This document shows positions 1 to 63,419 of a DNA stretch of 64,000 bases, piece after piece. The notes under the pieces are model-generated. The model was not told the DNA's origin. It worked only from the letters and a program-made list of their open reading frames with translations, and searched no databases. Every line of letters begins with the position of its first letter. Positions within the stretch are counted from its first letter, which is position 1. Origin of the DNA: Botryllus schlosseri. Its lineage: Eukaryota. Made by a program: the position numbers and the translations under genes. Location of the stretch: contig CM119373.1 of assembly GCA_051294905.1 (NCBI GenBank), positions 17,794,001 through 17,858,000 on the forward strand, in the 5' to 3' direction.

Positions 1-99
1 CCGCAATCACCAACAAAAATATCGCTGCGAATACACCTGCCGCTACTGTCCAAGTGGAGATACTTGTTGACTCGTCGAGAATTTGGGTTGTATCGGTAT
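1..99 (-). CDS. R1 transmembrane exon (truncated by window)
   Basis: Acceptor atatttcag at 100-101; open frame ending in the hydrophobic run WTVAAGVFAAIFLLVIA. Confidence 0.75.
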
Positions 100-3000
100 C
101 TGAAATATGACATCGTTTCATGGTATCAAGCAGCGTGGTCTAAAACGCAGTGAAATCCCAGTTTGTTGTCTTTTGAAAATAAGATTACATCACAATCACA
201 ATGGCTCAATCAAAAATATAGAGGGAACACTTGATCTTCGTTGACACCCTGCTGATACGTCATATTCGTATATGTTACATTATCATGATAATGCGAATTG
301 CAGTTCTTCGAATATTTGACGATACAAGGTTGATCTTAATACTGCGTTAATTTCCTTTCTGACTGTCTTACCACCGTGATAAGTAGCTGAAATTCAATGA
401 ATATTTATGGAATATGTTAATATTAGGAAACAGTACCACTGCGTTCAACAAAAGTAAACATTACGATTCTGTTGAAAACGTTTTATTTTACATCTTCGTC
501 GCTAGGTGGTGTGTTTTCCCGCGGCGATTCATGCTGTTTTATTCATTTTACATTAAAAATGAATAGATGCGAAAATGTTGGAATGAATTCGGTATATTGA
601 AATGATTTTGACCGAAAAAGCTATAGGCTACTGTGAGTAGATTATATACGGCTCGTATAAGTTGGTCAATGATCAGGGCTGGGTTAGTAGAGCGCACACC
701 ATACCATTCCGACCGCCTTCTATGCGTTGATGGCATTAGTCACATAGTTCGATTTCGGTATGTTTACTCGAAGGTGGTAGATTACTCGGTGATAACTTAC
801 CCGTCTTACCGTGTCATCGGGCAATACCATTCTCACAGACATGATTCTATCATTCTATGCAACTTAGTGATCTCGTCAGTTCACTACGTTGCCCTGGACA
901 ACGAAAGAAAACACAGCTTCAGAGACGTGCCTATTAAGTTACCCTATAATGAGCCGCATTAGCGTCTAATGAAATATAATTCTTTATGTCTATCAATATG
1001 CCTGTGGGAATTGTATGCCGGAATGACTTGGTTTACACCTTGGTCGTGCAATCTCAATCTTTGTTCGGCTTAGCTGTACTGTATTGGATTACTACGCTTG
1101 TAAATCCATCCGTCAGCAAGCTATCTAAACGACCGGGCCAGATTTACATCTTCAATTCGCATGTCAATCGCGTTGAAAGTGAAGTCCATTCAGACTGATA
1201 CGGTGTTTGCCGATTAGGGCCGTGGGAACTTCCATTTCGTCCCGTGTTTGTTCCTCCTACTGTGCACGATACTCTGGCTATTCTTCGACTAATTGAATAT
1301 TGAAACCGCTGCTGAATCACTATATCTATTATACTTATTTAGTAGAATTTAACGGTACGCCCTCTGGCTTTACCTGGATCTATACAAACAGGTACTACTT
1401 TGACCGCTGCGACAAAATAACATATATGTTTCCGAGTTGCTATGACGGCTAGTTGGTGCCAGCGTACTACGTATTTATGAAATCAATCGATGTTCATTCG
1501 CACCGAACTTAGCTACAAGATACATCGCATCCGTTTCGCTAACATACTAACTATACAGTGCATATCATACTTGATTAGGCTCGACGTAACTAGGTTCGCC
1601 AATTTTATAGTTACAGCGTTGATACGTAATTTGGAATCAACCTCCGCCTTGCTAGGCGCAATTCGCATTATTGGCTCCCAAATATCCCTAGCTAGAGTGC
1701 AACGCCATTGAAATACAGCATATGGAACTTACCTTTTTCACATTCGCGTCTTCTGAATTCATCTAAAATAGGAACACAACATACAGACATGATATTTCAA
1801 CGCCTCGGCGCGTTGTGAAACTACGTACTCTTCACCATTATTGATTTTCGAGCTTTCAACGGTCGCTGAGTTCTGTGTCGCAGTATCGGGACTGATTCCA
1901 GTGTTATCATATACCTTCCATTCTCGTTTATCTTTGGCCCGGATTCTTCCTTTGATCCGTTGTAATAGTAAACGAATTTTACCTGTCGATTGTATCGAGA
2001 TTTTAGCATGACAACAATTTCAAGCACTGAAGTCGACATCGTTGGACGAATTACTAATATGTGGAACGTGGGGTTGCAGCGTTGACATCACATTTCTATA
2101 TAATGGGGTTACTGAGAAATATATCGAATTTCGTTGCGAATATATCTCTAATTACTCCGGCATTGCTGCATCGATCAGTACAGCCAGAATTGCTTTACCG
2201 TGATTATTATTTTTACGGCTTGTCCTTCGTTTTGACTGATTTAACGTTATCACTTCTCATCATAGGTCATAATAATAGAATAAATACTCGTGCGCTAAGA
2301 ACCAGAATACACGTTTATTGGATGTCGGTGAAACCATGATCTGGGCTGGGCGAAAATGATGACGATGTTTTGGCGGAGAAAACTACACAATTGCGCAGTA
2401 AAGCTATTGCAATTCACCGTAAGCACCAGAAGTGCGTTATGGAAATTGAGATTTTCGACTCTCCTTAGGTTTCCAGCCATGTCTATGGCAACCCTGGTTA
2501 TAGTGTTAACAATGTCCCAATGATTATTAAGTATGATCAATCGTGCAATGATCTTATTCGGCATGTTTGCTCTGGTACCGTGGCCTAAAAAGCTGTGTCG
2601 GATAGTTTCAAAGAATTTTCAATTTATTCTGCTAAATTATTCTGTCGCTCCTCTCCGACACATATCGCTAGTCTTAGCTGATTTGCCAATTATTCGGTAC
2701 AGTATACGATTCGGCACGATTCACTGGACGTCGTAACTGGAAACCCTTTCGTCGCCGCATGCATACGGCGTGAAATCAAAGTTCTGCTTTTACGATATGG
2801 CACACATGACAGTAATTTCGTGCTATTATTTGAACTACTTCAAAATCGAGTCATGCTTCGAGTACTTTTACATATGTATTATTTTGCAATTATGTAGGCC
2901 TACCTATACCAAACGTATCGAGTGATGTATTAGATCTGTGCTTGCCAACAGTTGGGTCGCGATTCGCGAAGCTATTTCAGACGGGTCGCGTGTCATTTTC

Positions 3001-6000
3001 TAAAAGTTACAGTTTTCTATTCAATTTGTCAGATATGCCAAACACCGTTTCTTCTCAGGATAAGACGGGCAAAAACCCGTTCTCCTCTAAAGAAATTGCG
3101 CCTCTGAGTGTCGTAAGCCACGTTCCGGTGCTCACAATAATTCATGTCAGCTTTTTGTTACAGTCATTTTGATCGAAGCGCGAAGTTGGGCAGTATGTTG
3201 TTTCTATGCCTTGAAATATGAATTCATTCCTTTCTTCGAAGGCATTGCGAACGTTGATTGGCAAATGCAATCCAGCCCGTTTACAATCAACCAGCAATAG
3301 CCGGGACGCAATGCTGTACTCGTAACTCCATTGTGTTTGACGTAAAAGGCGAATTACTGCTCGAATACGCGCTTTCTCGTTTGCAATCATCTATCGCGTG
3401 AATTCTTGTCTGCTTGATACATTCGTTTTCTCGCAATTTGGCTTGTTGGCGACGATTTGAACGCATTGTGCGTCGAATTACGTTTTCATTCGTTTGGACA
3501 TATCTCATGGTGGGTCTTGCAATGAAACGTGCATTAAAAGCCGGTTGCGAACTGGAAAAGGTTGGGAAGCACCGGAACCTGCGATATCGAGGGCCCCGGA
3601 TTTAATTTAGTCTATACTTGCGGCGCAAGTTACTGTAACGGTGGTAGTGACTATTTCTCGCAAGGATTTCTAGCTGTGCTGAATAATCTATACTAAACGT
3701 ACTTTTGGGATTGCAATTTTGTCATTGGTAAGTATCGGCTATATAGCTGATATAGTTTAAATGCGCTGTCGCACCTGTGGTACCAATTCAGTGTTGTCAT
3801 ATTGTATAGCTACTTTTACGCGTAGGCGATGATACCCGGCGTTACCTCGCAAATTGAGTAATATCATCTATCATGTACGATTTTACTTATTCATCAGTCA
3901 CTCACATGTAACTAAAGCAATAGTCTGCCTATCATGAATTACTCAATTCCTAACGAAAGTTGAATAATTACTATACGTGGTTGGGTTATTTGTATACTAT
4001 TGCGCGAGCTATGCCGATACACAAATTATGTCCACGTCCTATTACTAGATTCTTACCGAACATAGACTTTTTCTTCCATACTTTTAACTTTTGCGTATGT
4101 AGTAGTAGCACTGTCATGTGAAAGTCATTGCACTTAACTTTCATTAACATTGTGCATTCGCACAAAGCGATTGTACCATTGGGTTCCACGACATATTTAG
4201 CGGTTGTCCAACATTTGAGCATGCGGCATATTGAAAAACGACAAATGCACAATGATCATGTGACAAGTTAGCATGCATCACTTGAAGATGTGACTTGCTA
4301 ACTCCCATATTAATCCTAAAACCTTTGCCATAACACCACCCCTGACCCAAACCGAAGACCAAATCCAACCCAAGCCCGAACTTTAACGCACCTGCATATT
4401 GCTTAGGTTTCACATGCAGCAATGCAGCATGTTTGTATGTCATGGCCTCATCAGCGCGATTACCGTGGTTGAATATCTATCTACTTTTACGGCGCTAGGC
4501 TACATATTAGTTCACTGTCATATACTAAATAACTGGTACTCACTTCCCGGTTGGTGTATGCAGTTTGGTTTGGAGTAATGAGAAGGAATGCTTCCGTTGT
4601 ACTACTCATTTCGGACACATCTCGTATTATGGCGTGAAATCCTGTCACATCTCGCGCACCCAAATACTGACCTGAACGCAATTCATGAATGTTTCACCGC
4701 CAAATGTTAGTTTAGTTACTTCTTTACCTTTAATTTTCCAGCTTAATTCGATTCCCAAGTGCATCTCGTCTTTGTTAGCGGATTGATGGCATTTTACTGT
4801 CACTGAAAAATTGGTCGGCTGCGGTTTTGGATGTCCTACGCGACTTGGTGGTGCATGATCTGATTGAAAATTTAGGCGTAAGCCACTTTGCTCAAGTTGT
4901 AAGTTTAGGATGTATCCAAACCAAATCGGCAAAATTTCAGTCTGTAGTGTACATTGTGAGGTCACCTAACATACGAGATGTATGGATTTTGATACCAAGT
5001 GTGGGGATCTCCGAAAAACCGTAATCCTGGTCCAAACCAGAACCCCTTGGCCAGAAATCAATATTTGTAAAAATGGTTCAAGTTGGTACCTTAATGAATC
5101 ATGGCCAAGATCGTTCGATATTCGACTTGTTTGTTCGTGTGAATCATGTATATTTTGCCATCGTGTATACTATGTGTGTTGTATTGCCAAAAGGCCGAGG
5201 ATATTAATTAAATGTGATTTGAAATCTCATGCGCAAACAAGTAAAATTATGTTTACTATCATGACTTGAAAATTGATTTTCTAAGGCGAGCGTATATATC
5301 CGGTGGTGTCCTCAGATAACCTGCCGGATTTCTAACCGTTTACTAGAACCGAAAGCAATTACTCTGAGGGTCTCTATCAACCAAACAAGATTGAAAGATC
5401 TTTCTACTTTTCTTTGAAACTAGGCATAGTGGCAAGTCTGGATTGGTGAACATTGTCCCAAACGTGGATTTATACGCTCTGTTAAGACACTTGCATTTTT
5501 TAATCCCGCCAAACAGTCATTGGCCACTTAAGCGTCTATATTGGCGCGGTTGTGGAAGCTCGGAATATCCTGCCTAGTGCCCACGCAATTCTAAACACAC
5601 TCATTTGCTGCAAGTTACTTGGTACAATCCAAATGAACGCAGCAATTCGAGAAACATTGAGAACAACGTTCATCGCACACAAGCGAGAACCCAGGGCTTC
5701 GGATTTGATCGGATCCGAAGCACTAGGTCACTTCGAATAATGATTAGTTCGTACAACACCTAAATAGCGCAAGTGTTCTGCCAAATACGTCATCCAATCT
5801 GGTGTTTTGGTTACAGTGATTGCATTATAACCTACTGCATAGATATTGGAAGTACAGTACATGCTTCATACTGGGAATAGTCTTACCATAAGTAACTTTG
5901 CATGCGAGTTTGTCCTCATGAGGCCGATCAATTTCACCACCAGCCTGCTGACTGCAGCTTGATTGCGCTTGAGGTAATAAGTTGACGAGGGCCAGAACTA

Positions 6001-6028
6001 ACCACGCAGTGCTAAATGCGGTCCTCAT
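1..6028 (-). CDS. IL-17 receptor-like gene R1 (3' part beyond left edge)
   Basis: Exons with GT-AG ends and matching phases: 5887-6028 (signal peptide MRTAFSTAWLVLALVNLLPQAQS-SCSQQ...ACKVTY, donor GTAAGA), 2701-2736 (TTSSESCRIVY), 2313-2584 (...ALLVLTVNCNSFTAQLC...), 1829-1982 (VKFVYYYNG...YMITLESVP...IMVK), 1733-1762 (EFRRRECEK), 1374-1406 (VKVVPVCIDP), possibly 372-386, and TM exon <1-99 (TDTTQILDESTSISTWTVAAGVFAAIFLLVIA). The exon series parallels R2/R3. Exons between 100 and 1370 are unresolved. Confidence 0.75.
5887..6028 (-). CDS. R1 first coding exon (signal peptide, CSQ motif)
   Basis: ATG at 6028; hydrophobic leader; SCSQQ...ACKV resembles IL17RA CSQPGLNCTV; phase-1 donor G|GTAAGA at 5886. 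Confidence 0.75.
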
Positions 6029-10344: not shown

Positions 10345-10940
10345 TCATTTTTTCGAACAGTTCTGGCTCTCATCGCCTGCTAAGCTTAGCAGAAGACGGA
10401 CTGTCTTCGTGGCCTTGTGCATTTTCGGTCTTGTGCGTTCGTTAGCTTCGTTAGCGAGACTAACCATCTCGTCCGTGCTGAACGGGCATTTTCTCGGCCC
10501 TTCCGAAAACAAGTTATCGTAGAACTTCCGCAGTTCCTCCGGCAGTTTGAACTTGCACAAATTATCCCGATTGCCGAAGTCTGGCCACGAGTCTTGCTTC
10601 TTGAGATGAAACGACACCAACGCGATTTTCTTCCCAGATGTTTCCTCGTTACGAGTGCTTCCTATCAGACTATTTATCCATTCGTTGAAATACAGATTAA
10701 TGCAGCTTTCGTTGCTTGTCTGTGGGCTCACTAAAGCAACAATGATATCTGATTGGGCGGTTGCGTTTCGTATCCAGGTCATTGGATCTGCGATGAGTCT
10801 GACTGTCTCCCAACGGTTGTACGTGATATCCGCCAGATCGTGCTTTCTGATTTCGTAAACTAGACTTTGGAAGGCGTACGAACAGGGATTGTCCAGCTCT
10901 TCGTTGATTTTCTCTAAGAAGAGGATACGCTTTCTTCTCC
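10345..10940 (-). CDS. R2 terminal SEFIR-domain exon
   Basis: Acceptor ctgttttag at 10941-10942; RRKRILFLEK...AFQSLVYEIRKHDLADITYNRWETVRLIADPMTWIRNATAQSDIIVALVS follows the SEFIR betaA-alphaA-betaB-W...W-betaC pattern; stop at 10345. Confidence 0.88.
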
Positions 10941-13900
10941 CTAAAACAGGATGGGGATTTGTTCCGTTAAGTTGCGTATAAATTCAACTCTTCTGTAGTA
11001 TCGTAGTCCGAGATGTAGTATCGCAGTATCGTGAATTTGTATTCTGAATCTAGTTGTGACCTTTGTGTGAATTTGATTCATATTCCGGCTATGCTATGGA
11101 CAATGGACATTGAAAATGGACATGGAAGTGAAATCCGGAACATTGATCAATAAATCTAATGCAATCCTACTTGTAGGATACTTGGTAATCATTAACATTT
11201 ACTTTGAGCGAAGGCGTTAGAAACATTTATTGATGATGATCACCGATTTTAAATGATGATCGCCGATTTTATACAAGTGAGTAGTTTTAGTTGTAGCTCT
11301 AGTTGCGCATTTAAATACAAATTAGTTCTAGATGACTAGAAAACACGTAGCGTCGATAGGCGTGAGTTGAGTTGTGATTACTATGCTCTATTCTGATGTT
11401 TTTCCAACCATTTCTCAGAAAATTCACATCTAACAGTGGAGTAGCCAGGGGTGTGTTTTGAGGGTCGAAAAGCCTCCAATTTCAAAATTGAACTCCCCTT
11501 CCCATTTAAATGCCGATTATGTATCCAATCTTTCTCCTATCATTTGCAAACAATAAATTTATATTATCAGTTATTAGTTGTATTTTAACTCGTTGGTTGC
11601 GGGTTGTTATCTCAGATGAGAGATAATAAGCATTCGTTTCTTATAGTTAACAACGATCAGCGGATGAATACACTGAGCATGGAAATGACAATGTAGGTCT
11701 ACTCAAGTGTGACCTTGTGAAATCTTGAATCAGTAACTGCCTGACTATCTCTATTTTGTAACCGGCATCGACCGTGACGAATTATCACCTAGTACGTAAT
11801 TCCTGGAAGTACCATGAGATTGCGGTTTTATTCAACGTCATATCATATCGTTTGCATATCATTTATGATGGCTTGCTCCTTGCGATAAGCCGCGATATGA
11901 CAGACGTAGTCACTGCTGACGGATTTTCTATTAAGTAAACCGATTTTATCTATAATCACTCACCGATATTTGCATTCAGTCCCCAGGTGATCCATCCTAT
12001 GAACGCTATGGAGAACGCAATGCCTCCCAAAGTGATGCTAAATGTGGTTAATCCGATACCTAAAAGAGGGATAGGATCTTGTTTGTTGTTTTAAATCGAG
12101 GTCCGTGTGTCGTAGATGGAGTCAAACGTTTCATATAATCATTGCCGGCCTAAATTCCAACGATAAGTGTGTTGTAGTGCAAATTCCTGTATTCCTAAAT
12201 CCTTTCTACGAGATTGTAACAGATTAATCGACGAAGCATTGATGAAAGCTAGCGGTTACGCGATACCCATGTTGCCGTATTTTGATAATAGTAATCTTCC
12301 GTAAAATCTCTGCTTAGTCAGCTATTCCTGTGCTACGCAATGTAAAGTGCTAGCTGCACCTAGTGGTGACATTTAATTTGACGAGAGAGAAAACTAAAAT
12401 GGCGAAGTTCTCGTGGGCTTTTCGTTGCATTCGAGAACACGTCCGCGTATCCATATCATTGGTTTCGATCTATACTTGGTTGAAAATTATGTCACACTGA
12501 AATATGAATACGTTTTAATAGTGCTGTTGCTATTGGTACGAAATGGTTGATTGAGCAACTAGCTGTTGCAAGTACGGGAAAGTAAATCTGCTAACCTCAT
12601 TTCAGATTGATTGTATTTTATGTTTAATTTAGGCAGATGCTGGGGAATGAATGATAGAATGCTCAAGGCGGTATTTTTAAAATTTATTATCCTTTGTACG
12701 TAGTGCGCTGTCAAATCGTCATACTTCGAAATGAAGACGTAATAGTGTTTTCATTACCGATTTCTCGTCGAAGATATTTACGAACGGGTAGTGAATATAT
12801 CTGTGATTTGCATATTCCATATCGCACGCTAGAAATGTACCTCGTACGGGGAATGTTAATGCCATGCCGATACTTTATCTGTGTCCTAAAATAAGACCGA
12901 GTGCTATAAATACGCTTATCGGTCCATGTATCGACTTTATGTAATTGAATGGGGGTATCGTCCGGTAATTATGTCACAGACCTCGTCTAAGTCTCTTTAC
13001 CTGTGCTGGAAGGTGATGAAGATATGGTGTTGTTATCTGTAAACAAAAACATTCCTTTAAGCCTTAAAATGTATTCTCTATAATTTCTCTGTTAGCATGG
13101 TATATTGTCCACAGAGTTATAGTTATTTTAGCATGCTGAATGGTTTGTGTGTGATATGATTCGAACGGGAAATGCCTTTGTTATCAACAACTCTTACGTT
13201 ATCATGATCGGGATAAGTGCGCGACAATTTGAATTTTGTAATAACAACTAAATGTATGTGCTGTTAACTTGCTTTAGGAACTAAACCTATACGTACCAAG
13301 TATACCACTCGGTATTAATGATATAAAGAGGTCAACCAGTCGAGATACTAGAATTGTAAATTGTATATTCTTGTATCGTTGTATCAAATAAATAGCAGTG
13401 ATGTTATTATGCTACGATGGTGATTGTATGACCTCTTCAATTTTACGCATTTACGCATGCTATTTACAATGCATCTATGACACCAATGATGGTTCACCGT
13501 TCATTGTACGCACATGCGTCATGATTCATGAAAATTGGGTGCCGGACGATACTTATCGCGAGTTCGAGTCGTCCGCAAAACCTGGATTTGCAATGTATTC
13601 TTTTTTTTTGCGAAAAACATGTCAACAGTAGTTTCGGCTCGACTCACCAGTCGCTGTTATCGTAGATGCCACCGTCGTCCGTAGTTCTTGCTGTTGCTGC
13701 TCAGGCCGTGCGTGTCTGCCTTGAGAAATGAAATTGTTAGGTAAATGCGTTACCAACGGCACAGTTTATATGATCAACAGGTATAACATAACTCGCTGCT
13801 CTATATAGATGACACAAATCTGTGTGTAATCCATCTGACACGGAGAGGCTGAAGTCATTTCTCATCTCTTGGAGTATTTCTTTATTTTTTTCGAAGGAAA

Positions 13901-16900
13901 TAAGGAATCGTTAACATCTTCACGTAGTATCGCGGATTCAAATTCTTCCGACCTTTAGAGTGTCCGGAAACATGATATTTTTGGTCAATGGCCATGCAAA
14001 ATATGATGGTTTCAGAAATATTTTGGGCTCCTCTCATCAGATTTGCCTCTATTCCCCGTAACGAAAAATCATGATCATTTAGTACATGGAGTTCCCAAAC
14101 TAGGGGTCGTTCGCCTATTCTCTGAGGTCGCGGAGATGCAAATTAACTACCAATGACAATGACTATTTCATAAAAAATAACTTGGGTCGATTGGGTGTAG
14201 ATAGAAATCGATCGTTGTTATTGTATTGATTGACTTTCTTAGACTGAGGACGGATGATGACGGGTTCATAATTGTTACTACTGCTCACATATATAGTCGA
14301 CAGCTTCACGCAAAGGCAGTGAGTAGGTTTGGGCGAAGGGGCTAACCATATTTTTAGTAACATGCACGTCAAATGGAGAGGTGGGGTCGAGAAACATTAC
14401 CGAATCGAAATTTGGGGTCGCGACCATAAAAAGTTTGGGAACCCGTTGTTTAGTATCTAGGTGCTGACGATTACCCCTGACAAGCTTCAGCCGAAAATAT
14501 TCGGGTTCATTTCAAAATGAATAGAATATGCAACTGTATATTGAATTTCTTTACCTCCAAGAAGCTTTTCTTGCCCAGAGTTGGTCTGTACGCGGTAGCT
14601 TACTCCTACATTTTCGGAGTACTCAAGCGGTTATGTTTATACACTACTTCCACTGCTACTTCACAGCTTTGTAGGCTGTAGTATTGATGCTGGGAAATGC
14701 TACCATATAGTCACAACATATCAAACACATGACAATTGTCCACGACACATACGGGCAATGGTACCTACGTCTAGCACAATGTATTGTCTTTCTCGTCTTT
14801 TTATGTCGGCAATCTGAAAAGGAACGGCAGTGCTGAATGGATATCCCTTGGGTAAATCGTAAGCTGCGGGCCTTACCTGGAATCTTAACTAGCATATACG
14901 CGGCAGTGTCTTCGCCAACGTCGAAATCCCCAGGCATTGATATGATCGTCACGAGGATCTTATGTCCAGGTTCCAACGCGACGCACTCGTCGTTTTCGCA
15001 AATGTAACGATAAATGAAATGCACCTAAAGTAAAAAATCACGATTCCCGAAAACCTGAGATGGTAAAAGGGGTTTCGAGAATTCCGATACTTCACAAGAT
15101 TCAATTTCAAAAAGCGTCCAACGAAAGTGGGCCATGCTACAAGTTGGCAGCTCAGGAAATATAATCAGGAATGTCGCCCTAGTGTAAATGACCATAATAG
15201 TCGAAACACCGTAAATACCAAGAATAACAAAGACGAAATCTACAAATTAAGAACTACATTAATCGTTGTTAAGACATGGAGGCAAATTGAAAAATATACC
15301 AGTCAAAAATTTTCATGTACATTGTACAAGGTTATGTATATGAATATGTTAGTGATTTTAATATTTTTCTGTTCTCTCAGTCCACTTCAGATTTGTTCAG
15401 ACGCTAAATCAATGTCAGATTTTGCGTGTTGTGCGCTCGTAAATTGTCCCACTACACATTAGCATGCTTAGAAAATTGTGCTAAGAATCACCACGAACGT
15501 AAGTATGCTACAATATGTATCCTTGGACGTCACTCGAATGCCGAACGTCTATCTTTCGTATTACCGGCCTATCATATCTCGAACACTTACCCTTCTGCTG
15601 CCGTCTTCTTCTGTGGTGGTGTTATGAACCAAGACGTCATTGAAACAGACGTCGTAACCGAATAGCTGTCTCGTGGAGTGGAAATTTATCGTGTATCCAG
15701 TGATATCGGTCATTTGACTTGCTGCGGGAGAAACCATATAAAGATTATAGCGTGACTTAGCGCATATCTTTTTCCGACATGCACTGTGCAATGTACATTG
15801 GGGATGTGGAAAAATGACTTTTTTTCTCAAATTGTACTGGCTACTCGATAAAATTGGTAGGTTACTTAATTAAAGGCTGCACACCAACAAGTAGCCGAAT
15901 TCCTACAGCAGAAAGTTTTCTTATTTATTATATGAAAATAAATGAAACAATTTTCTAAATTTTCTCTTCACCCCATGAAACTGTCTATAGAAATGATGTC
16001 CACCAAATTTGGCTCAACTCATACCAGAGGAAGCGGAGTTATTACCGTCGAAAATTTTGGATTTGAACAAAATAGTATTTACGGTGGGCACATCTATAAT
16101 AAATACCATCGGATGAACAGAATATTTTTATTTTTTATTTATTTAATTTTATATAATAAATATAAACTTCATTCTATTGTAGCAATGCGGCTACTGGTTG
16201 GAATTGAACCGAATTTGGTGTGCAGCCTTTAATTAGGTAACTTGACAATTTTATCAAGTAGCCAGTACAGTTTGAAAAAAAGTCATTTTTGAACACCCCT
16301 TGTGCATGTCAGGCGATCCAATGTGTCATGTGTGCAATATCTATCCACCCGCATCTTATAGATATTGACCATTCCAATCACGCAAATAGTACAAATACAA
16401 CAACGATGTAGTCTTTCGACTGACGACTGTAAGACCATAAGAGAGACTATGACAAGATAGTTCTGTTCAGGGGTGGTCAAAGTACTCAGCGTTGTTAGTC
16501 AAGTAGACCTAGAAGTAACGACGTAACTACTTCGAAGTATAGAATGGTAGGTCTGAAAATTACACAATTGTTACTTTAAAGAAGTTGATTTGATCGAGGG
16601 TTCACATGCATTTAACACCTAATAGGAACTGGCTACATTCAAAGTTAACCAAATGCGTCTCCATGATTAACGGTTAATTACGGGCGACTCCCAAATGGGC
16701 TTACGGTAATACAGGGGCTATTTCACACGCTCATTACGATAATTACACTCATTGAAGTGATCCAACTCCTCTTAAAGCTATACCTTATAGTATTCAGGTC
16801 GTGAGAACAAACCCCGGCCGGATCAGACCAAATCCGAAAGTAAACTGCTATCCGCGGCTTCCCCGCTTGGCGCTCAGCATTACCAAGATAGCGTGGACGT

Positions 16901-19711: not shown

Positions 19712-19748
19712 TTCGGATGATTTTGTATCCCTCATCGCGAATTTCGCC

Positions 19749-26693: not shown

Positions 26694-27268
26694 TCATAAG
26701 TTATTGTACTCAGTTTGCTGCGAATTATTTTGTAGCAACGTCTCTCTTTGATGAATTGCGTCAATGTGATCCGTCCCATACTGACAATTAGACAGCGTGT
26801 TAGTTGATTGTGTTTCTAGCGCGAGGAATTTATTCATCGTCACGTCCTTGCGAATATGTTTTCCTGTTACTTTACGCAGAAGTCTGAAGAAATCCCGATC
26901 AGCTTCGTATATCAGAAACTTTGTTTGATGCTTCCTTTGATTGTTTTTCAGCGTTAAAATCGCAATGTCAGTATCGCTGGCAATTGAATGACAGTTAGCG
27001 CATTGAAGGGCTTGTTTCATTTCGCTTGACACGTTAAACTCTTCCATATCTTCGGAATAATTCCATCTTTCAACTATAAAAATGACAATTGTCGATTGGT
27101 TCATTAACTCCTGGTACCAGCGACAGCCGCTTTTTCTGATCTCTTCCTGGTTTTCCCAATTGACGGTGATGTCCAAGTTGTATACGTCACGTAACTTTGT
27201 CACCAGTCTGTGGGCTTTTACGATATCGAAACTGCTCTCCGATGTTATCATCGCTATAGAGTTGTGTC
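26694..27268 (-). CDS. R3 terminal SEFIR-domain exon
   Basis: Acceptor ctcttttcag at 27269-27270; HNSIAMITSE...AHRLVTKLRDVYNLDITVNWENQEEIRKSGCRWYQELMNQSTIVIFIV. Confidence 0.88.
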
Positions 27269-51200: not shown

Positions 51201-52638
51201 ACTTTCATGGAGTGAACAGAAAATTTTCAAATTTTTTATTATTTATTTTTATATAATAAATAGAAACTTTCTTCTCCTGCAGCAAAGCGGTTACTAGCTG
51301 GAATTGAACCAAATTTTGTGTGTAGGCTTAAATTAGGTAACCTAACAATTTTATCAAGTAGCCAGTACGATTTGAGAAAAAAAAGTCATTTTTGAAGAGC
51401 ACTACTGTACGTACATTATACAACGCGAGAAACGTTGTAACTTCAGCAACCCTGTGCCCCTAATGTACCAGTACAATCGTGAACAAGCGAGTTTGTCTCA
51501 AAATGCTTAAGTATCACTGGTATGGCGTGACCAGGGGTCGAGAATATCTGGAGCACGCGGTCGCGGTTCGCTGAAATATACAGACTACTCAGAAAGAGTA
51601 TATGACGTTATGTTCCAAAAAGATCAGTGTTTACCTTTATATTTGCAGAGCAAAACTTATGACCGTGTTCTCATTGGCACAATGTTGGGACTGGGAGTAT
51701 TTCCATTGTGACGCAGATAACTCAACGAGGTCACGGCAAAATGATGGGTTGGCGCTTGATTATATCATATATAAATGTGATATATAACTTCTTACACAAT
51801 CAGAAAACTGAGATAGTAACGGTATTTAGATAGTAATGTACGCGAGCATCCTGAGCGCTCGCTTGTTACCACTTTCTCATTGGAAATCCTCTTGCCACTG
51901 ATTTCCCTTTTAGCTAGAAATGCGTTTCTTAATGTGCGCAAACAGAATCCACTGGGACATATATGATATATCCGCATGAAATTGTGCGTTTTTCATTGTG
52001 GATTCCACGTTCGAATCCAAACGATGCCAAGTGTAAACACGCGAGAGATGTTTCCATGTTCAGATCAAATAAAAATCTGAGTTAATCCTCATCTTTAGTA
52101 CACAGTTACACGATACATTAATCATCATCTATATATGCTTGCAGTGTATTATTTGCGCCGCCCACATCGCAATATGCACTATATGGCGACTACATTGAAA
52201 ATACGTGGGTGTAAACTAGGTGGTTTACCGCATATCCACCAAAGCGCCGGGTGCAAATGAGGCAATCAACACTTTCTGGTTCAAAACTTTGCTTACGCGC
52301 TCAACCTAATGGCGGGAGATGATGCGTAAAATACACCAATACTTATGGACATTTGGACATATATTTCAGGGTTGCACCGGGGCCTACGTAGGCCCCGGTT
52401 GTACGCTATGGCTTAACCAGGTGAAATACACGATTTTGGTGTACTATGTTCCATCACCTTGAGTTTCAAACGACAGTTTCGATCCAGACTATAACAAATA
52501 CTCACATTCCATAGAACACCGTATCCGTTTCGTGGCGCTGATCGGAATTGCGTTATTCTTTCCGCACACAGATTGGCATTCCTCCGGGAATGTGACATCA
52601 GACATCAGAAGAGTTACATATAATACAAACAACCACAT
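26694..52638 (-). CDS. IL-17 receptor-like gene R3 (two FnIII-like domains, TM, SEFIR)
   Basis: Exons 52506-52638 (signal peptide MWLFVLYVTLLMSDVT...RCSME), 43389-43415 (VCNDRVRD), 41476-41601 (...IALVVKWSQK), 41264-41418 (...GTVQGYYL...TTEED), 32172-32322 (DVVHFEFPC...IRLHSLP...VTIP), 30643-30714 (CEEDERL...ECQAYWK), 30233-30299, 29945-30051, about 29017-29188 (phase unresolved), 28904-28939, 28452-28550 (TM HTIYFVLAGAIATFLIIPILLCMV) and 26694-27268 (SEFIR). Without the 29017-29188 exon the path is in frame (1548 nt, 515 aa). The link of the first exon across 9 kb is inferred. Confidence 0.78.
27374..28082 (+). mobile_element. hAT Charlie/SPIN-like MITE with nested SINE fragment
   Basis: TIR CAGGGGCGGGC; perfect TSD ccttagac; internal LLALFGCTYIF dimerisation-domain relic. 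Confidence 0.85.
27738..27901 (-). mobile_element. 5'-truncated SINE inserted in MITE
   Basis: 11-bp TSD cagctactgtt (27727-27737 and 27902-27912); (caaa)n tail; body matches SINEs at 30364 and 45915. Confidence 0.8.
28452..28550 (-). CDS. R3 transmembrane exon
   Basis: gtcgttttag ... G|GTAGGG; 99 nt, phase 1-1; 22-aa hydrophobic run followed by QRSHHISR. Confidence 0.85.
30364..30625 (+). mobile_element. tRNA-derived SINE (B box deleted)
   Basis: gagatagcgtagtgg A-box head; body alignable by eye to the 45915-46203 copy. Confidence 0.7.
31140..31641 (+). mobile_element. hAT Charlie/SPIN-like MITE (sister of 27374 copy, no SINE)
   Basis: TIR CAGGGGCGGGC/CAGAGGCGGGC; perfect TSD ctctagaa; relic LLALFGSTYIF...RSNITDIHGQSLLQVATYDMQPEL. 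Confidence 0.85.
31822..32121. mobile_element. hAT MITE with TAGGGTTACCA termini
   Basis: TIR TAGGGTTACCA; TSD gccatatc/gctatatc. Confidence 0.75.
33457..33873. mobile_element. Palindromic hAT MITE (TAGGG family)
   Basis: TAGGGCTG...CAACCCTA; TSD ctatgcag/ctatacag; shares sequence with the 50078 and 59078 copies. Confidence 0.8.
34192..34987. mobile_element. hAT Charlie-type MITE
   Basis: CAGGGGCGGCTAACC...GGTTGGCCGCCCCTG; homologous to 54138-54578 and to the 37950-38177 fragment; TSD not clean. Confidence 0.75.
38604..41132. mobile_element. 2.5-kb foldback hAT (hATm-like) element made of two inverted transposase 3' halves
   Basis: TAGGGTGGAGTG...CACTCCACCCTA; perfect TSD cccattat; arms about 1.2 kb, each with decayed VYFPSWFEIK...FAH...LGDDDE and HPW(H/Y)NQAVERDVKVVT...GF.R.D.LI..LKS motifs reading outward. 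Confidence 0.85.
41845..42600. repeat. Dispersed hAT relic, inverted copy at about 62250-62950
   Basis: Shared tract e.g. gctcgaaatatccagctttcc...ctctgctgtgagcttgacccgcaatcacac; decayed SSxxRxxS...WIFRANFRNR dimerisation-like motif. Confidence 0.6.
44321..44939. mobile_element. Palindromic hAT MITE (TAGGG family)
   Basis: TAGGGTGGTTCAAAAATAACC...; perfect TSD gtacacag; near-identical outer arms. Confidence 0.88.
45915..46203 (-). mobile_element. tRNA-derived SINE, near full length
   Basis: A-box-like TAGCGTGGTGG (46186-46196) and B-box GTTCGAGTC (46143-46151) on the minus strand, followed by the family body. Confidence 0.75.
46960..48133. mobile_element. hAT Charlie-type non-autonomous element
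   Basis: (T/C)AGTGGTTCTTAACCTT termini; TSD tactagat/tattagat. Confidence 0.78.
50078..50699. mobile_element. Palindromic hAT MITE (TAGGG family)
   Basis: TAGGGCTGTTCAAAAATAAC termini; perfect TSD atgtacaa. Confidence 0.88.
50738..51404. mobile_element. Palindromic hAT MITE (TAGGG family), near-perfect hairpin
   Basis: TAGGGCTCTTCAAAAATGAC / GTCATTTTTGAAGAGCACTA; TSD ctgtacat/ctgtacgt. Confidence 0.88.
52506..52638 (-). CDS. Signal-peptide exon assigned to R3
   Basis: MWLFVLYVTLLMSDVTFPEECQSVCGKNNAIPISATKRIRCSME, ending T|GTGAGT (phase 1) exactly as R2 exon 1 does. Confidence 0.65.
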
Positions 52639-52683
52639 CGCAGATATTAACCAACAATCAACCACATCGCAGATATTAACCAA
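52630..52683. repeat. Tandem duplication (25-nt identical core, period 29) spanning the R3 start codon
   Basis: caaccacatcgcagatattaaccaa at 52630-52654 and 52659-52683. Confidence 0.9.
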
Positions 52684-59931: not shown

Positions 59932-60386
59932 TCAACAAGGAGAGCGATTACTGTCTAAAAACTCGAGCAACTCTGTCCCCTCCTGACAGGCGTGTTCGAA
60001 ATCGAAATACTTTACTCGCGTTGCATCCGTAGCGCTTTCCATTCGGTCTTCCGGGTCGCTGTTTAAAAATATCAGCCATTTTCCCTTTCCCAAACTCGGT
60101 TGCTGGTATAAGTTGTGAGGGTACGTAAACTCGCTTTGATCCGCCGTTCCTATGCAGTTGTTATTATCGAAATCAATGAAGCGCTTAGCGTTGATTAGCA
60201 CCAGGGCGTCGGCTTCGTCGAGCGCGTTGAGGTACCAATTTTTGCAGTCGGTCGGAGAGTTTACGATCTTATTATGTTCGTCCCAGTTTAGGCGCAAGTC
60301 GAATCCGTGCTGTCGTAAGTTTTCCGACAGTCTCTTTGCTTGTTGTGAGTCTTCACTGCCGGCTACTATTAGCAGGTGACTGATGC
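59932..60386 (-). CDS. R4 terminal SEFIR-domain exon
   Basis: Acceptor ttgatttcag at 60387-60388; ISHLLIVAGSEDSQQAKRLSENLRQHGFDLRLNWDEHNKIVNSPTDCKNWYLNALDEADALVLIN. Confidence 0.86.
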
Positions 60387-63300
60387 CTGAAATCAATGAG
60401 TGTGTTAATAAAGTGTGGACACAAGTGGTGAACTATTAGACCAGAGGGTAACCCGACTTGTACGTTTTCGGAATACTGATATAGGTTTTACACACTTGCA
60501 CTATACCTTTACTGTTTCTTAACCTTCACCAACGCGCAGAACACTGACGGTAATATGCAAGCCTTCGGGAAACCCCAAATTTCTCTGCGTCATAACAACA
60601 AAAACAAACAATACCACAATACGTAACCAACTAGGCGTGTGTCTGGCCAAACGAGACTGCAGCTCAGTCAGGAGAAGGAGCCAGACAGCATTGCTGCGTC
60701 ACAAAGCCAAACTCGATCACAATACAAAACTTGACGCTGATTTGGGGGGTTCTAGGGCCATGAGCAGAATACAATTTATATTTTCGTAATCGGTACAGCA
60801 GCAGGTTTCCATTGATATCCGTTTTATCAGATTTAGCGCTCGGCAATCTGGTAAAAAGAAATGGCCGTAAAATTGCCTTTGGCCAAATGGAAAGTATGAC
60901 GTAACACAAATGCAGTGAGCCGTTCAATCTCGCTGTGTCCACAGTCCACAAAGTCTACACCATTTAGGACACTTTCACTATGGTTACACTACTATAATAG
61001 GAAAGGAAAGTTCAGGAAAGGCAACAACAGTAATTTTTTAAGTCCTAAAAGTCCGATGCGAATCTCCCACTAAAATCCTCTGCCCCTGTTCCCCTGCTCT
61101 GCAGGTGTATCCTTATTGTTGTGTATCTTGTCAATCGTTTATTCAATTATATGCCAATAGTGTATACAACTTTTGTTCTTTCGTTGGGACACACGAAATT
61201 TTGACACAGTACAGTTCAGTAGCATCATTATGAAAATAGTCAATAGCATGGAAATTGAGTTTCCGGCAAAATTTAGGCAGTAGTCCGCAGAATTACTAAT
61301 TTGCCTAAAGGGGTCCGGGACTACAAAAATGTTGGGAATCTCATCTGTCAAATCTCTCTTTACACTATTTCTGAATCTATTCTTATTTGTGAAATGTTTC
61401 TATGCTCTCATCGTAATTTCGATCTAATTTCTGGTTTTCCTGTAAATTGCTACCACAGGAGAACTGTATAGTGCGAAACGAGCCAAGCTGGCTGTACGGG
61501 CATCTTTTGTTCCTATCATTTAACAATGAACTATGACTTGATATTAACGGAACTTTATTCCATGTCCAAGTTTTCGCGAATTCAGTGATTCTAGTTCTAA
61601 CTAAATTTGGGAAAAACTGTGGCCATAATTCATATTTTATTCTAATCTGGGAAAAACTTTGTGGCTGTAATTCGAATTCTAATCTAATTTGGAAACTGAA
61701 AATTTTCTAATTAACTAACAGTTTACAACAGATTACGTAATATGGGTGGAATCAATGTGTTTTCTGGATTCCGAATAAATTCCGGTTTCATATCATGACC
61801 AAGTCCACAAGGTAATCGTCAAGGTGCTCGTTCAATGATTTTGCACGAGCATCCATGATTACATCGGTTAGAATGAAAAAAAGATACTATTGCAACACGT
61901 TGTCGCGATAAGCCTCACGGCCACCAAGATTGCTAGCGACACCTTGTGTATTGTATAAGATATGCACACCTGATGATAGATTGAGTGAAGTAGCACATCT
62001 TTTCTTCCATAGCTTCCTGGATCGTAGATATGCTATTATTGTCAACAGGACAATATCAAGCATCCCGACACAGATCAAGACAGCAATCATTTGACCTTTT
62101 CTTGTGCTTAGATAACCGTCCTTGTCTGTGAATAAATTATTACTGTCGCGGTACGTTACTGTAAACCAGGGATGGTGTGTACGTCTGAAAGGTTCAGGTT
62201 CGTGTGAACGCGAACCTTTTTGAAAGGTTCTGTGTGAACGCGAACGTGAACCTCATGACGTCACGTGACGTCATATTGCTAATTCCAACCGTACATTCCA
62301 GTGAAGTGATAGCCTATATTAACGTACACGATACCTAGCGACGACTCGGGACACAATATGCCACAAATGCTGGATACTTATTGACGTTTTAAACGCCGCC
62401 AGATGTATCAACTGGGGCAATCAATGGATATCATCATCTCAGAAAATCAATATCTTCGCCAACAATTTCGACGAGGACTAGTAAGGGAATGTAAGCTTAC
62501 TCCTCAACGGTCTAGGCCAGACCGGACAATGTATTCGGCGTCTGAGTGTTAACAAGTTTTACAGCAGTAGCCAACACCCCAATCTCACGGATTTGGTTTT
62601 TATGATACAATAAACATATGGAATCAAGATTGATCCCGTACGCCTGCTAGATTTTTTTTATCACAACAACGACATCAATTTCGCTGATTAGTTGAATATT
62701 TCAATGAGCGTCATTCGCTGACTAGTGACTATCTATGTAGTGTATTTCGTTCTTGATGTTGTGTGATTGCGGGTCAAGCTCACAGCAGAGAGTCACCAAA
62801 TATTCACAAAAGGAAAGCTGGATATTTCGAGCAAACGTTTGTAACAAGGCAGGTAAAATATTTGAGATGTTCAAGATGCATGCTCGTTTAGTGTTGATTT
62901 TTTAAGCGGCCAGCACCATGCATAGAGTGGCCCGCAGTCGAAATGCAATACATTCCAACCCAAGATGTTATAATGAAGTTTTATAGAGTAAATAATTCTA
63001 GATGATATGGAATATATTTTGAAATTAGCGCCACTAATTAGTAGTTCTACTTGATATTTGTTTCATTTTGATATCCCTTCTGTCGGTAAAAATAATTTAT
63101 ATCGGTATCGGCTGAAAATTCTGATATCGGTTGGGCTCTGACAATAAGGATTCACCTTCGCCGAGCAGTAAGGTTTCGATTTCGCCCTCAAAATGTGAGT
63201 TGTTCAATTTCTGTTTCGATACATAAGTTAACATTATATGAGCAGGTGGATATGATTTGTAAGAAGACTCTGTGAAGCTATTTATTAGTCGATATGAGAC

Positions 63301-63419
63301 TTGGAGGATTGGCATTATTAATGGTACTCGTTGCGAGCATACATTATCGCAGTGCTTTTCAACCCATGGGATGGTTCGAACTTGTGTGAATGAAACATAT
63401 AGCAGTGCGGATGAAAATC
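59932..63419 (-). CDS. IL-17 receptor-like gene R4 (5' part beyond right edge)
   Basis: SEFIR exon 59932-60386 and TM exon 61970-62125 (MIAVLICVGMLDIVLLTIIAYLRSRKLWKKR) are well supported. Candidate juxtamembrane exon 61297-61344. Candidate FnIII-D2-end exon 63156-63419 (VRTIPWVEKHCDNVCSQR, cf. IL17RA VQIQPFFSSCLNDCLR), low confidence. Confidence 0.78.
61970..62125 (-). CDS. R4 transmembrane exon
   Basis: tttattcacag ... G|GTGTGC; 156 nt, phase 1-1; hydrophobic run followed by a basic cluster. Confidence 0.8.
62250..62950. repeat. Dispersed hAT relic, inverted copy of about 41845-42600
   Basis: gtgtgattgcgggtcaagctcacagcagagag...ggaaagctggatatttcgagc is the reverse complement of the 41.9-42.0 kb tract. 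Confidence 0.6.

What the first reader, a model, noticed from the sequence alone, without database searches (positions are those of the whole stretch)
1..63419. Tandem array of at least four highly divergent IL-17-receptor-like (FnIII-TM-SEFIR) genes
Seen: four co-oriented minus-strand genes with the same exon series (signal exon; W-S-x-K exon in R2/R3; G-Y exon; V-x-F exon ending in phase 1; C..C exon; TM; single terminal SEFIR exon seen for R2-R4), yet little residue identity between copies. Established: SEFIR plus IL17R-type FnIII defines the IL-17 receptor family, which has five members in mammals. Inference: a lineage-specific, rapidly diversifying cytokine or immune-receptor cluster in an invertebrate, continuing past both window edges and invisible to the ORF track.
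Basis: partly seen in the sequence, partly recalled or inferred. Interest (0 to 1): 0.85.

Follow-up and report, generated by a model that had tools for sequence, protein, structure and literature searches.

The report
Divergent IL-17-receptor-like gene cluster
The window holds a head-to-tail row of three solid genes and one partial gene for very divergent relatives of the interleukin-17 receptor, each apparently with one extracellular domain instead of two; a similar row in another, probably sea-squirt, species shows it is an old family, not a recent burst.

Summary
Mostly right. Three minus-strand terminal exons (R2 10345-10940, R3 26694-27268, R4 59932-60386) are the only window matches to a SEFIR profile built from other species (E 5e-41, 7e-10, 1e-4). 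The family profile hits only IL-17RB SEFIR in the PDB. An AlphaFold model of the R2 exon matches IL-17RE/RD/RC best in Swiss-Prot.

R2 splices into a clean 7-exon, 458-aa signal-ectodomain-TM-SEFIR ORF, collinear with an uncharacterized Styela clava protein. That protein's ectodomain model, though low-confidence, matches IL-17RA/RB domain 1 first. R1, R2 and R3 share collinear ectodomain exons with identical intron positions and phases.

Corrections:
- There is only one FnIII-like domain (D1). No D2 was found.
- R4 is secure only for its TM and SEFIR exons. Its proposed V-x-F exon resembles nothing.
- The array is not lineage-specific: a compact four-gene array in another species has the R3-type and R2-type genes adjacent in the same order, so the paralogues are old.

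Splice junctions could not be tested, because the single read-laying run failed. The same scan noted another SEFIR cluster elsewhere in this genome; I did not check it. Verdict: a new variant of a known kind, of moderate interest.

The parts
10345..10940 (-). R2 terminal exon: SEFIR domain plus C-terminal tail and stop codon
   Evidence: Acceptor ttttag|GG enters in phase 1. Pfam SEFIR E 0.0056, below the cut-off. phmmer hits P0002 at 1e-27 and P0006 at 6e-4, and both pass the Pfam SEFIR cut-off. The external-only HMM gives E 5e-41. The AF2 model has pLDDT 75.8, and its best matches are IL-17R SEFIR domains.
11964..12059 (-). R2 transmembrane exon
   Evidence: Encodes IGLTTFSITLGGIAFSIAFIGWITW. 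Acceptor has 14 of 15 pyrimidines, donor is ATATCG|gtgagt, and the exon enters and leaves in phase 1.
14769..14813 (-). R2 short C-x10-C exon
   Evidence: Best-scoring phase 1-to-1 two-cysteine exon between E4 and the TM exon. Styela P0005 has C-x10-C at the same place.
14877..15024 (-). R2 E4 (VHFIYRYICENDEC...), last part of the FnIII-like domain
   Evidence: Goes from phase 0 to phase 1. tblastn aligns it to P0005 residues 139-169. It is one of the two top hits of the external-only E4 HMM.
15591..15721 (-). R2 E3 (ITGYTINF...TTTEED)
   Evidence: Goes from phase 1 to phase 0. Collinear with P0005 and R3.
17554..17727 (-). R2 E2 (...IGIELRWSNK)
   Evidence: Enters and leaves in phase 1. External-only E2 HMM gives E 1.8e-7. 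tblastn aligns it to P0005 residues 66-96.
19525..19711 (-). R2 E1: start codon, signal peptide and Cys-rich N-terminus (an alternative ATG lies at 19735)
   Evidence: Donor AAAGAT|gtgagt leaves in phase 1. The junction codon gives W in ERWCTP, matching ELWCPP in Styela.
1..99 (-). R1 transmembrane exon, cut by the left window edge
   Evidence: Phase-1 acceptor at 99. Encodes STWTVAAGVFAAIFLLVIA, which runs to the edge.
1829..1982 (-). R1 E4 (VKFVYYYNGS...)
   Evidence: Goes from phase 0 to phase 1 and is 154 nt long. Its boundary aligns exactly with the R2 E3/E4 boundary. The HMM hit alone is weak, E 0.61.
4544..4671 (-). R1 E3 (VTGFHAII...)
   Evidence: Goes from phase 1 to phase 0, after a 56-nt intron. 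Collinear with R2.
4728..4859 (-). R1 E2 (...LGIELSWKIK)
   Evidence: Enters and leaves in phase 1. Its end aligns with the end of R2 E2.
5887..6028 (-). R1 E1: ATG and signal peptide MRTAFSTAWLVLALVNLLPQAQS
   Evidence: The donor leaves in phase 1.
26694..27268 (-). R3 terminal exon: divergent SEFIR-like domain plus stop codon
   Evidence: Acceptor tcttttcag enters in phase 1. External-only SEFIR HMM gives E 7e-10. blastp to L001 La and Lb gives 1e-6 and 2e-7. The R3-type profile against the R2-type profile gives hhalign E 2.9e-7. No direct Pfam hit.
28452..28550 (-). R3 transmembrane exon
   Evidence: Encodes IYFVLAGAIATFLIIPILLCMV followed by QRSHH. Enters and leaves in phase 1.
32172..32322 (-). 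R3 E4 (DVVHFEFPC...)
   Evidence: Goes from phase 0 to phase 1 and is 151 nt long. It is the top hit of the external-only E4 HMM.
41264..41418 (-). R3 E3 (VQGYYLHY...VTTEED)
   Evidence: Goes from phase 1 to phase 0, after a 57-nt intron. Collinear with R2.
41476..41601 (-). R3 E2 (...IALVVKWSQK)
   Evidence: Enters and leaves in phase 1. External-only E2 HMM gives E 0.0066. The R3 ectodomain against Lb gives z 15.9.
52506..52638 (-). Candidate R3 E1 (MWLFVLYVTLLMS...RIRCSMEC); weak
   Evidence: Signal-like start, a strong phase-1 donor TGGAAT|gtgagt, and a Cys pattern like the first exons of La and Lb, but blastp E is only about 1. It overlaps a 29-bp tandem repeat.
59932..60386 (-). R4 terminal exon: most divergent SEFIR-like domain plus stop codon
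   Evidence: Acceptor gatttcag enters in phase 1. External-only SEFIR HMM gives E 1.1e-4, covering the N-terminal half only. blastp to R3 gives E 0.003. Pfam shows only a weak TIR_2 match, E 0.022.
61970..62158 (-). R4 transmembrane exon
   Evidence: Encodes MIAVLICVGMLDIVLLTIIAYL followed by RSRKLWKKR. Enters and leaves in phase 1.
63156..63419 (-).
   Evidence: The donor GCGAAG|gtgaat does leave in phase 1. However, the acceptor is poor and the piece resembles no other copy (z -1.1 to 1.2).

Best explanation
The window carries a head-to-tail array of paralogous genes for type I membrane receptors of the IL-17-receptor (SEFIR) superfamily.

Each solid copy (R1, R2, R3) has the same layout: a signal peptide, a Cys-rich N-terminus, one FnIII-like domain of the IL-17R D1 type split over three exons, a short stalk, one transmembrane helix, and a cytoplasmic SEFIR domain on a single terminal exon. 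R1's SEFIR exon lies outside the window. R4 has secure TM and SEFIR exons, but I found no recognisable ectodomain for it.

The host is probably a tunicate. This rests only on the closest full-length relative being from Styela clava and on the 56-57-nt introns.

Inferred mechanism, not shown here: the D1-like domain binds an IL-17-type cystine-knot ligand. Receptor chains pair, as IL-17RA pairs with RB, RC or RE. The SEFIR domains then recruit the SEFIR adaptor CIKS/Act1 by SEFIR-SEFIR contact, which leads to TRAF6 and NF-kB type signalling.

The paralogues are old. An orthologous array with the same local gene order exists in another species.
For: SEFIR domain:
- The R2 exon finds only four true relatives among 1.84 billion representative proteins. 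Two of them, P0002 and P0006, pass Pfam's SEFIR cut-off at 25.8 and 48.7 bits.
- The family profiles A1 and A5 hit only IL-17RB SEFIR in the PDB, at E 7e-5 and 2.4e-4.
- R3 and R4 are linked to this domain in two ways. An HMM built only from other species gives E 7e-10 and 1e-4. An independent profile-profile comparison gives E 2.9e-7.

Ectodomain:
- The spliced R2 protein (458 aa) is collinear with Styela XP_039269350.2 (local score 156, z 27), and six cysteines align.
- That Styela protein gives Pfam IL17R_fnIII_D1 at E 0.0027.
- The Styela ectodomain model matches IL-17RA/RB ectodomains in its top 19 PDB hits and IL-17RA/RD/RB/ILCR-1 D1 in its top 8 Swiss-Prot hits.

Paralogy:
- Intron phases and positions are conserved in R1, R2 and R3 and in the L001 genes.
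- Ectodomain comparisons among R1, R2 and R3 give z 5-8.

Age of the array:
- The R2/Lc and R3/Lb pairs are the best reciprocal matches (SEFIR blastp; ectodomain z 18.6 and 15.9).
- They are adjacent in the same order in both species.
Against: - No transcript or junction evidence was obtained. The read-laying one search failed and cannot be repeated.
- Direct Pfam hits on the window exons are below the cut-off (R2) or absent (R3, R4).
- The ectodomain structure is a low-confidence model (pLDDT 54.6) of the Styela orthologue, not of a window protein.
- R4's ectodomain was not found, and RNA runs hold only 5-9% of the R4-region words.
- I picked the R1 exons partly by motif, so their z-scores are somewhat inflated. 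Exon-class HMMs find R1 only weakly.
- Ligand binding and adaptor recruitment are pure inference.
Confidence: 0.8

Rival explanations
1. R4, and possibly other copies, is a decaying pseudogene or a truncated gene that has lost its ligand-binding ectodomain. The functional array would then have three genes, or R4 would encode only a membrane-tethered SEFIR protein.
For: R4's proposed E4 exon resembles nothing. Only a weak E3-like hit exists, at 62515-62646, E 0.007. R4's SEFIR matches the family HMM only over its N-terminal half. RNA runs hold 5-9% of the R4-region words, against 16-51% for the R2 region. An in-frame Met sits directly before the TM helix.
Against: The TM and SEFIR exons are open and have good splice sites in the family's phases. 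The upstream exons may simply lie beyond the right window edge or be too diverged to detect. The word shares are crude and depend on tissue.
Confidence: 0.4
2. The cytoplasmic domains are TIR domains or another STIR or flavodoxin-like domain, not SEFIR. The genes would then be IL-1R/TLR-like or a different receptor class.
For: R4 gives a weak Pfam TIR_2 hit, E 0.022. The language-model look-alikes of the R2 exon mix TIR and SEFIR clusters, all below 0.9. DNPH1 and MilB score close to SEFIR in the fold comparisons.
Against: Relatives pass the Pfam SEFIR cut-off. The profile hits in the PDB are IL-17RB SEFIR only. The nine best Swiss-Prot structural matches are all IL-17R-family SEFIR regions. 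The ectodomain matches IL-17R D1, not Ig or LRR domains.
Confidence: 0.05
3. The ectodomain is a class I cytokine-receptor (haematopoietin) type FnIII module, suggested by the W-S-x motif, fused to SEFIR. That would be a new domain combination rather than an IL-17R relative.
For: Language-model look-alikes of the Styela ectodomain are IL-3RB, IL-21R, IL-2RB and similar clusters at 0.75-0.78. The W-S-x-K motif recurs in the copies.
Against: Those scores are below the tool's 0.9 lead threshold. Foldseek puts 19 IL-17RA/RB chains ahead of any other FnIII domain. Prolactin receptor appears only at rank 11 in Swiss-Prot. Pfam gives IL17R_fnIII_D1, not fn3 or IL6Ra-bind. There is no WSXWS motif and no second domain.
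Confidence: 0.05

Closest known systems
Vertebrate IL-17 receptors IL-17RA to IL-17RE (PDB 4HSA, 7UWM, 7UWK, 4NUX, 3VBC, 9OT1)
   Same: Both are type I membrane proteins with an N-terminal FnIII-like D1 and a cytoplasmic SEFIR domain. These receptors are the best structural and profile matches for both halves. From my own knowledge, not tested here: tandem duplication also occurs in vertebrates, where IL17RC and IL17RE are neighbours.
   Different: No second FnIII domain (D2) was found here. The ectodomain is about 200 aa rather than about 270-290 aa. Identity is about 10-20%. The window exons fall below Pfam's cut-offs. R2 ends about 40 residues after the core domain, with no long C-terminal extension like that of IL-17RA.
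'Degenerated' invertebrate IL-17Rs described in PMC11087794 (PNAS 2024)
   Same: That paper reports that about half of the IL-17Rs in most subphyla have FN3 and SEFIR domains too diverged for domain models. It attributes this to subphylum-specific co-evolution with ligands and adaptors. These genes fit that description.
   Different: I could not see that paper's tunicate gene list, because no supplement is held. A conserved four-gene tandem array and a D1-only ectodomain are not mentioned in the text I read.
Styela clava LOC120344281 (XP_039269350.2, 'uncharacterized protein')
   Same: It is the closest full-length relative of R2. It shows the same order of features, six aligned cysteines, W-S-N and G-Y motifs, C-x10-C, a TM helix and a SEFIR domain.
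   Different: Identity is low: 25% to R2 in the SEFIR alignment A1 and 20-30% to the R2 ectodomain exons in A2. It has a longer low-complexity stalk. It is not annotated as an IL-17R.
Ciona 'putative IL-17 receptor' (AY261862) with three IL-17 ligands
   Same: It belongs to a tunicate IL-17 pathway that is expressed in haemocytes, pharynx and gut and responds to LPS and stress (PMC5465252, PMC10258323).
   Different: Only one receptor is discussed in those papers. I could not compare its sequence with the window's genes.
C. elegans ILCR-1 / ILCR-2
   Same: They appear among the top structural matches for the ectodomain (ILCR-1) and the SEFIR model (ILCR-2).
   Different: They are larger proteins (718-846 aa), function in neurons, and are not in a tandem array.

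Membership tests
IL-17 receptor family | Cytoplasmic SEFIR domain (Pfam PF08357) | tested here: met
   R2 scores 17.4 bits directly, below the 23-bit cut-off. Its homologues P0002 (25.8 bits) and P0006 (48.7 bits) pass. The family profile hits IL-17RB SEFIR at E 7e-5 and 2.4e-4. The model's best matches are IL-17R SEFIR domains. R3 and R4 are linked only indirectly, by the external HMM at 7e-10 and 1e-4 and by hhalign at 2.9e-7.
IL-17 receptor family | First FnIII-like ectodomain of IL-17R type (D1, PF16556) | tested here: met
   This was met through the Styela orthologue, with caveats. Pfam gives E 0.0027 at 17.9 bits, below the 26-bit cut-off. The AF2 model has pLDDT of only 54.6. Even so, its top 19 PDB hits and top 8 Swiss-Prot hits are all IL-17R-family D1 domains. 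The R1, R2 and R3 ectodomains align collinearly to it, z 6.3-27. For R4 this feature is not met.
IL-17 receptor family | Second FnIII-like domain (D2, PF16578), giving the 'double-FN3' that PMC11087794 uses as the definition | tested here: not met
   In the R2 model only a 15-aa C-x10-C exon lies between D1 and the TM helix. The Styela mRNA model has about 78 aa of low-complexity stalk there and no D2 Pfam hit. Unrecognised exons in the R2, R3 or R1 introns cannot be excluded without transcripts.
IL-17 receptor family | Signal peptide and a single transmembrane helix between the ectodomain and SEFIR | tested here: met
   Hydrophobic TM exons followed by basic residues are present in R1-R4. Signal peptides are present in R1 and R2. 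R3 has only a candidate, and none was found for R4.
IL-17 receptor family | Binds IL-17 cystine-knot ligands and recruits CIKS/Act1 through SEFIR | not testable with these tools
   This needs binding and signalling assays. No IL-17 ligand gene or other Pfam domain was found in the window's larger open frames.
TIR-domain receptors (IL-1R/TLR) | TIR domain (PF01582 / PF13676) | tested here: not met
   Only R4 gives TIR_2, at E 0.022 and 15.6 bits against a 28-bit cut-off. No TIR protein ranks above the IL-17Rs.
Class I cytokine receptors | Cytokine-receptor homology module with a WSXWS motif | tested here: not met
   Each copy has a single W-S/K-x-K, not WSXWS. Language-model look-alikes score 0.75-0.78, below the lead threshold. 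Structural matches favour IL-17R D1.

The most novel reading that the evidence does not exclude
Ascidians keep an ancient, syntenic array of single-domain (D1-only) IL-17R-like chains. These act as interchangeable subunits of heteromeric receptors for the few tunicate IL-17 ligands. At least one array member, R4, has become an ectodomain-less, membrane-tethered SEFIR protein that modulates or decoys signalling. The same scan has an unchecked note of a similar copy, 'paralogue X', elsewhere in this genome.
Probability: 0.25. Interest if true: 0.55.

Novelty: new variant of a known kind. Interest (0 to 1): 0.42.

Why it matters
Tunicates are the sister group of vertebrates. The papers I could read describe their IL-17 pathway as three ligands and one putative receptor.

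A conserved tandem array of very divergent IL-17R-like chains would enlarge that repertoire. The closest annotated relative is still labelled 'uncharacterized', and standard domain models miss the window copies. The array would give a concrete set of candidate receptor subunits to test against the known Ciona and Botryllus IL-17s.

These genes would also offer an outgroup for how the vertebrate RA-RE set and the two-domain ectodomain arose or were reduced. They are a practical example of receptor genes that are missed when annotation relies on long ORFs or on Pfam cut-offs.

Tried and rejected
1. Read laying. No junction evidence was obtained.
2. Single-exon searches against PDB sequences gave nothing.
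3. Pfam on single window exons gave only sub-threshold hits.
4. Three word-indexed homologue searches (P0005, the full-length profile A3, the R3-type profile A4) returned only the queries' own clusters. The family is almost absent from protein databases.
5. The look-up of encoding contigs had no record for Styela P0005 and no DNA for P0001.
6. The first hhalign run, A4 against A1, was discarded because A1 contained the R3 and R4 rows. I repeated it against the independent alignment A5.
7. The global percent-identity table from my own script is inflated by gappy alignments and is not used.
8. Regex searches for V-x-F or C..C motifs and simple TM scans were too noisy to settle the C..C exons of R1, R3 and R4.
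9. I looked for other genes, an IL-17 ligand, tRNAs and Rfam families in the window. None was found.
10. All-against-all comparison of the frames mostly recovers dispersed and inverted repeats, not extra receptor copies.
11. I searched the paper library for the run accessions and the Styela locus name. There were no hits.

Full report
**What the window is.** It is 64 kb of eukaryotic DNA with about 40% G+C and no N runs. It has no tRNA genes and no Rfam matches. The only long minus-strand open frames with a plausible domain are three candidate terminal exons, at about 10.3-11.0 kb, 26.7-27.3 kb and 59.9-60.4 kb.

**Direct domain tests on the window exons are weak.** Pfam gives SEFIR at E 0.0056 (17.4 bits, cut-off 23) for the first exon, nothing relevant for the second, and TIR_2 at E 0.022 for the third. 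Single-sequence searches of PDB sequences find nothing. The three exons barely match each other by BLASTP: R3-R4 E 0.003, R2-R3 E 0.15.

**SEFIR identity of the R2-type exon.**
- An exhaustive phmmer search of the R2 exon against 1.84 billion representative proteins finds only four true relatives. These are P0001 (1e-40), P0002 (1e-27), P0005 (2.8e-6) and P0006 (6e-4). Two further rows are repeat artefacts.
- P0002 and P0006 pass Pfam's SEFIR cut-off at 25.8 and 48.7 bits.
- P0005 is Styela clava XP_039269350.2, annotated 'uncharacterized protein LOC120344281'. It carries sub-threshold SEFIR (E 3e-4) and IL17R_fnIII_D1 (E 2.7e-3) matches.
- A profile of the family (A1) hits IL-17RB SEFIR chains at E 7.3e-5 and 0.038. 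The other four rows, all at E 0.06 or weaker, are unrelated proteins.
- A profile without R3 and R4 (A5) hits only those two IL-17RB chains, at 2.4e-4 and 4.9e-3.
- An AlphaFold model of the R2 exon has pLDDT 75.8 and pTM 0.75, with a flavodoxin-like beta-alpha fold.
- Foldseek against the PDB is not discriminating: DNPH1 ranks first and IL-17RA/RB/ACT1 chains rank second and third.
- Against all of Swiss-Prot, the nine best matches are the SEFIR regions of IL-17RE, IL-17RD, IL-17RC and C. elegans ILCR-2.

**R3 and R4 terminal exons.**
- An HMM built only from non-window sequences finds exactly three significant hits among 2,220 six-frame segments of the window. They are R2 (5e-41), R3 (7e-10) and R4 (1.1e-4, N-terminal half only). 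The window therefore holds no further SEFIR exons.
- R3 matches two terminal exons of a foreign contig, La at 1e-6 and Lb at 2e-7.
- R3, R4, La and Lb align with invariant N-W...I...W-Y positions.
- This R3-type profile matches the independent R2-type profile at hhalign E 2.9e-7, probability 93%, over 129 columns.
- An earlier comparison was invalid because the target alignment contained R3 and R4.

**Gene models.** I read splice sites and phases off the sequence. R2 has seven exons:
- E1 19711-19525
- E2 17727-17554
- E3 15721-15591
- E4 15024-14877
- E5 14813-14769
- TM 12059-11964
- SEFIR 10940-10345

Spliced, these give an uninterrupted 458-aa protein with a signal peptide, a TM helix and a SEFIR domain. 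The E1/E2 junction codon creates the W of 'ERWCTP', which matches 'ELWCPP' in Styela. That is an independent check on that junction.

R1 (E1 6028-5887, E2 4859-4728, E3 4671-4544, E4 1982-1829, TM 99-1) and R3 (E2 41601-41476, E3 41418-41264, E4 32322-32172, TM 28550-28452, SEFIR 27268-26694) repeat the same phases. E2 enters and leaves in phase 1. E3 goes from phase 1 to 0. E4 goes from phase 0 to 1 and is 148-154 nt long. The TM exon enters and leaves in phase 1, and the SEFIR exon is entered in phase 1. The E2-E3 intron is 56-57 nt in R1 and R3 but 1.8 kb in R2.

R1's TM exon runs into the left window edge, so its SEFIR exon is outside the window.

**Ectodomain paralogy.** Local-alignment z-scores against 300 shuffles are 7.3 (R1-R2), 5.0 (R1-R3), 8.0 (R2-R3), 27 (R2-Styela), 6.7 (R3-Styela) and 6.3 (R1-Styela). 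The alignments are collinear, and the exon boundaries coincide. One caveat applies: I chose some exons by motif, which inflates z. As an unbiased check, exon-class HMMs built only from other species find R2-E2 (1.8e-7) and R3-E2 (0.0066) and rank R3-E4 and R2-E4 first and second. R1 is detected only weakly.

**Ectodomain fold.**
- The tools do not accept spliced window proteins, so I modelled the Styela ectodomain, with window and L001 exon fragments as alignment rows.
- The model is poor (pLDDT 54.6) but consists of seven beta-strands, followed by two short helices at the C-terminal end.
- Its 19 best PDB matches are all IL-17RA or IL-17RB ectodomains, E 3e-5 to 2.5e-3 over 133-154 alignment columns. 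Generic FnIII domains come only after them.
- In Swiss-Prot the eight best matches are IL-17RA (residues 64-191), IL-17RD, IL-17RB and ILCR-1.
- The A2 sequence profile also picks out seven IL-17RA chains, but at a non-significant E of about 1.
- Language-model look-alikes point to class I cytokine receptors at sub-threshold scores. I treat that only as 'FnIII-like cytokine receptor'.

**Only one FnIII-like domain.** In R2 a single 15-aa C-x10-C exon separates D1 from the TM helix in my model. In the Styela mRNA model the spacer is a low-complexity stalk of about 78 aa. It fails the 'double-FN3' definition used in PMC11087794.

**R4.**
- Its TM exon (62158-61970) and SEFIR exon (60386-59932) are open, well spliced and in the family's phases.
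- The proposed V-x-F exon at 63419-63156 has a poor acceptor and resembles no other copy.
- The only other trace is a weak E3-like hit at 62646-62515, E 0.007.
- RNA-labelled runs hold 5-9% of the sampled words of 59700-64000, against 16-51% for the R2 region. This measure is crude.
- R4 may continue beyond the right edge, may be decaying, or may encode a TM-SEFIR protein without an ectodomain.

**The array is conserved in another species.**
- P0006 lies on a 24-kb Logan contig (L001, with twin contig L003). The contig carries four co-oriented genes, La to Ld, in about 19 kb, each with the same exon series and phases.
- The best cross-species pairs are R2-Lc (SEFIR 5e-17, ectodomain z 18.6) and R3-Lb (SEFIR 2e-7, ectodomain z 15.9).
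- Lb-Lc in that contig and R3-R2 in the window are adjacent in the same order and orientation.
- The R2-type/R3-type split therefore predates the separation of the two species. The low identity between copies reflects age and fast overall divergence, not a demonstrated recent lineage-specific burst.
- La and Lb are closer to each other (1e-13) and may be a later duplication. The R4-La and R1-Ld correspondences are not established.

**Context from the literature.**
- PMC11087794 states that about half of IL-17Rs in most subphyla have 'degenerated' FN3 domains, and often degenerated SEFIR domains, that domain models miss. It ascribes this to subphylum-specific co-evolution. Its supplement is not held.
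- Tunicate reviews and expression papers mention one putative IL-17R and three IL-17s in Ciona.
- I found no description of a tandem array or of a D1-only architecture. The search covered open-access papers only.

**Rest of the window.** The other large open frames have no Pfam match. The remaining self-similarity is dispersed and inverted repeats. A weak candidate first exon for R3 lies at 52638-52506.

**Verdict.** The finding is best described as three solid copies and one partial copy of an old, conserved array of D1-only IL-17R-like receptors. Cytokine binding and SEFIR-adaptor signalling are inferred from the family, not shown. Splice junctions remain untested.

Noticed in passing
L001:1-19337 and L003:1-20425 (Logan contigs from SRR10746997 / SRR10746996): A compact array of four co-oriented IL-17R-like genes, each about 4.5 kb, with the same exon phases as the window genes. 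La and Lb are close duplicates of the R3 type. Lc is P0006, of the R2 type. Ld is a fourth type. The species is unknown to me.
   Followed up: partly
window 4672-4727 and 41419-41475: The E2-E3 introns of R1 and R3 are only 56-57 nt long, and in R3 the intron is in frame and stop-free. The homologous R2 intron is 1.8 kb. Removing the short intron restores the W-S...G-Y spacing seen in Styela.
   Followed up: partly
window 10345-10940 (R2 helix YFNEWINSLIG, residues 83-93 of the exon): Another note in this scan says all three SEFIR domains keep a glutamate at the alphaC position used by TIR NADases. In alignment A1 that position is K in P0002, and no Glu aligns there in the Styela protein or P0006. 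It is therefore not conserved across the R2-type family.
   Followed up: partly
window 33517-33760, 44392-44878, 50242-50584, 59124-59625: A dispersed repeat family, 55-97% identical at the translated level, is present in both orientations in the introns and intergenic DNA around R3 and R4. It is probably a MITE-like or other transposon remnant.
   Followed up: no
window 38491-39510 versus 40188-41332, and 50740-51392: Long inverted repeats whose arms are 84-97% identical at the translated level. One pair lies just downstream of the R3 E2/E3 exons and the other is in the R3-R4 gap.
   Followed up: no
window 43177-43872 (minus strand): The longest open frame in the window, 232 aa, lies between R3 and R4. 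It has no Pfam match and no similarity to the receptor family. Its nature is unknown.
   Followed up: partly
window 52625-52683: A 29-bp tandem repeat (2 copies, 96% identical) overlaps the start of the candidate R3 signal exon (ATG at 52638).
   Followed up: no
window 62515-62646 (minus strand): A weak match (E 0.007) of the G-Y exon HMM lies between R4's proposed V-x-F exon and its TM exon.
   Followed up: partly
another piece of the same genome (scan notes s1-306297, s1-306311): The scan's index lists a second tandem cluster of four SEFIR-type copies inside a putative NUP98-96 intron. It also lists a copy with a broken ectodomain but open TM and SEFIR exons. If real, the family is larger than this window shows.
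   Followed up: no
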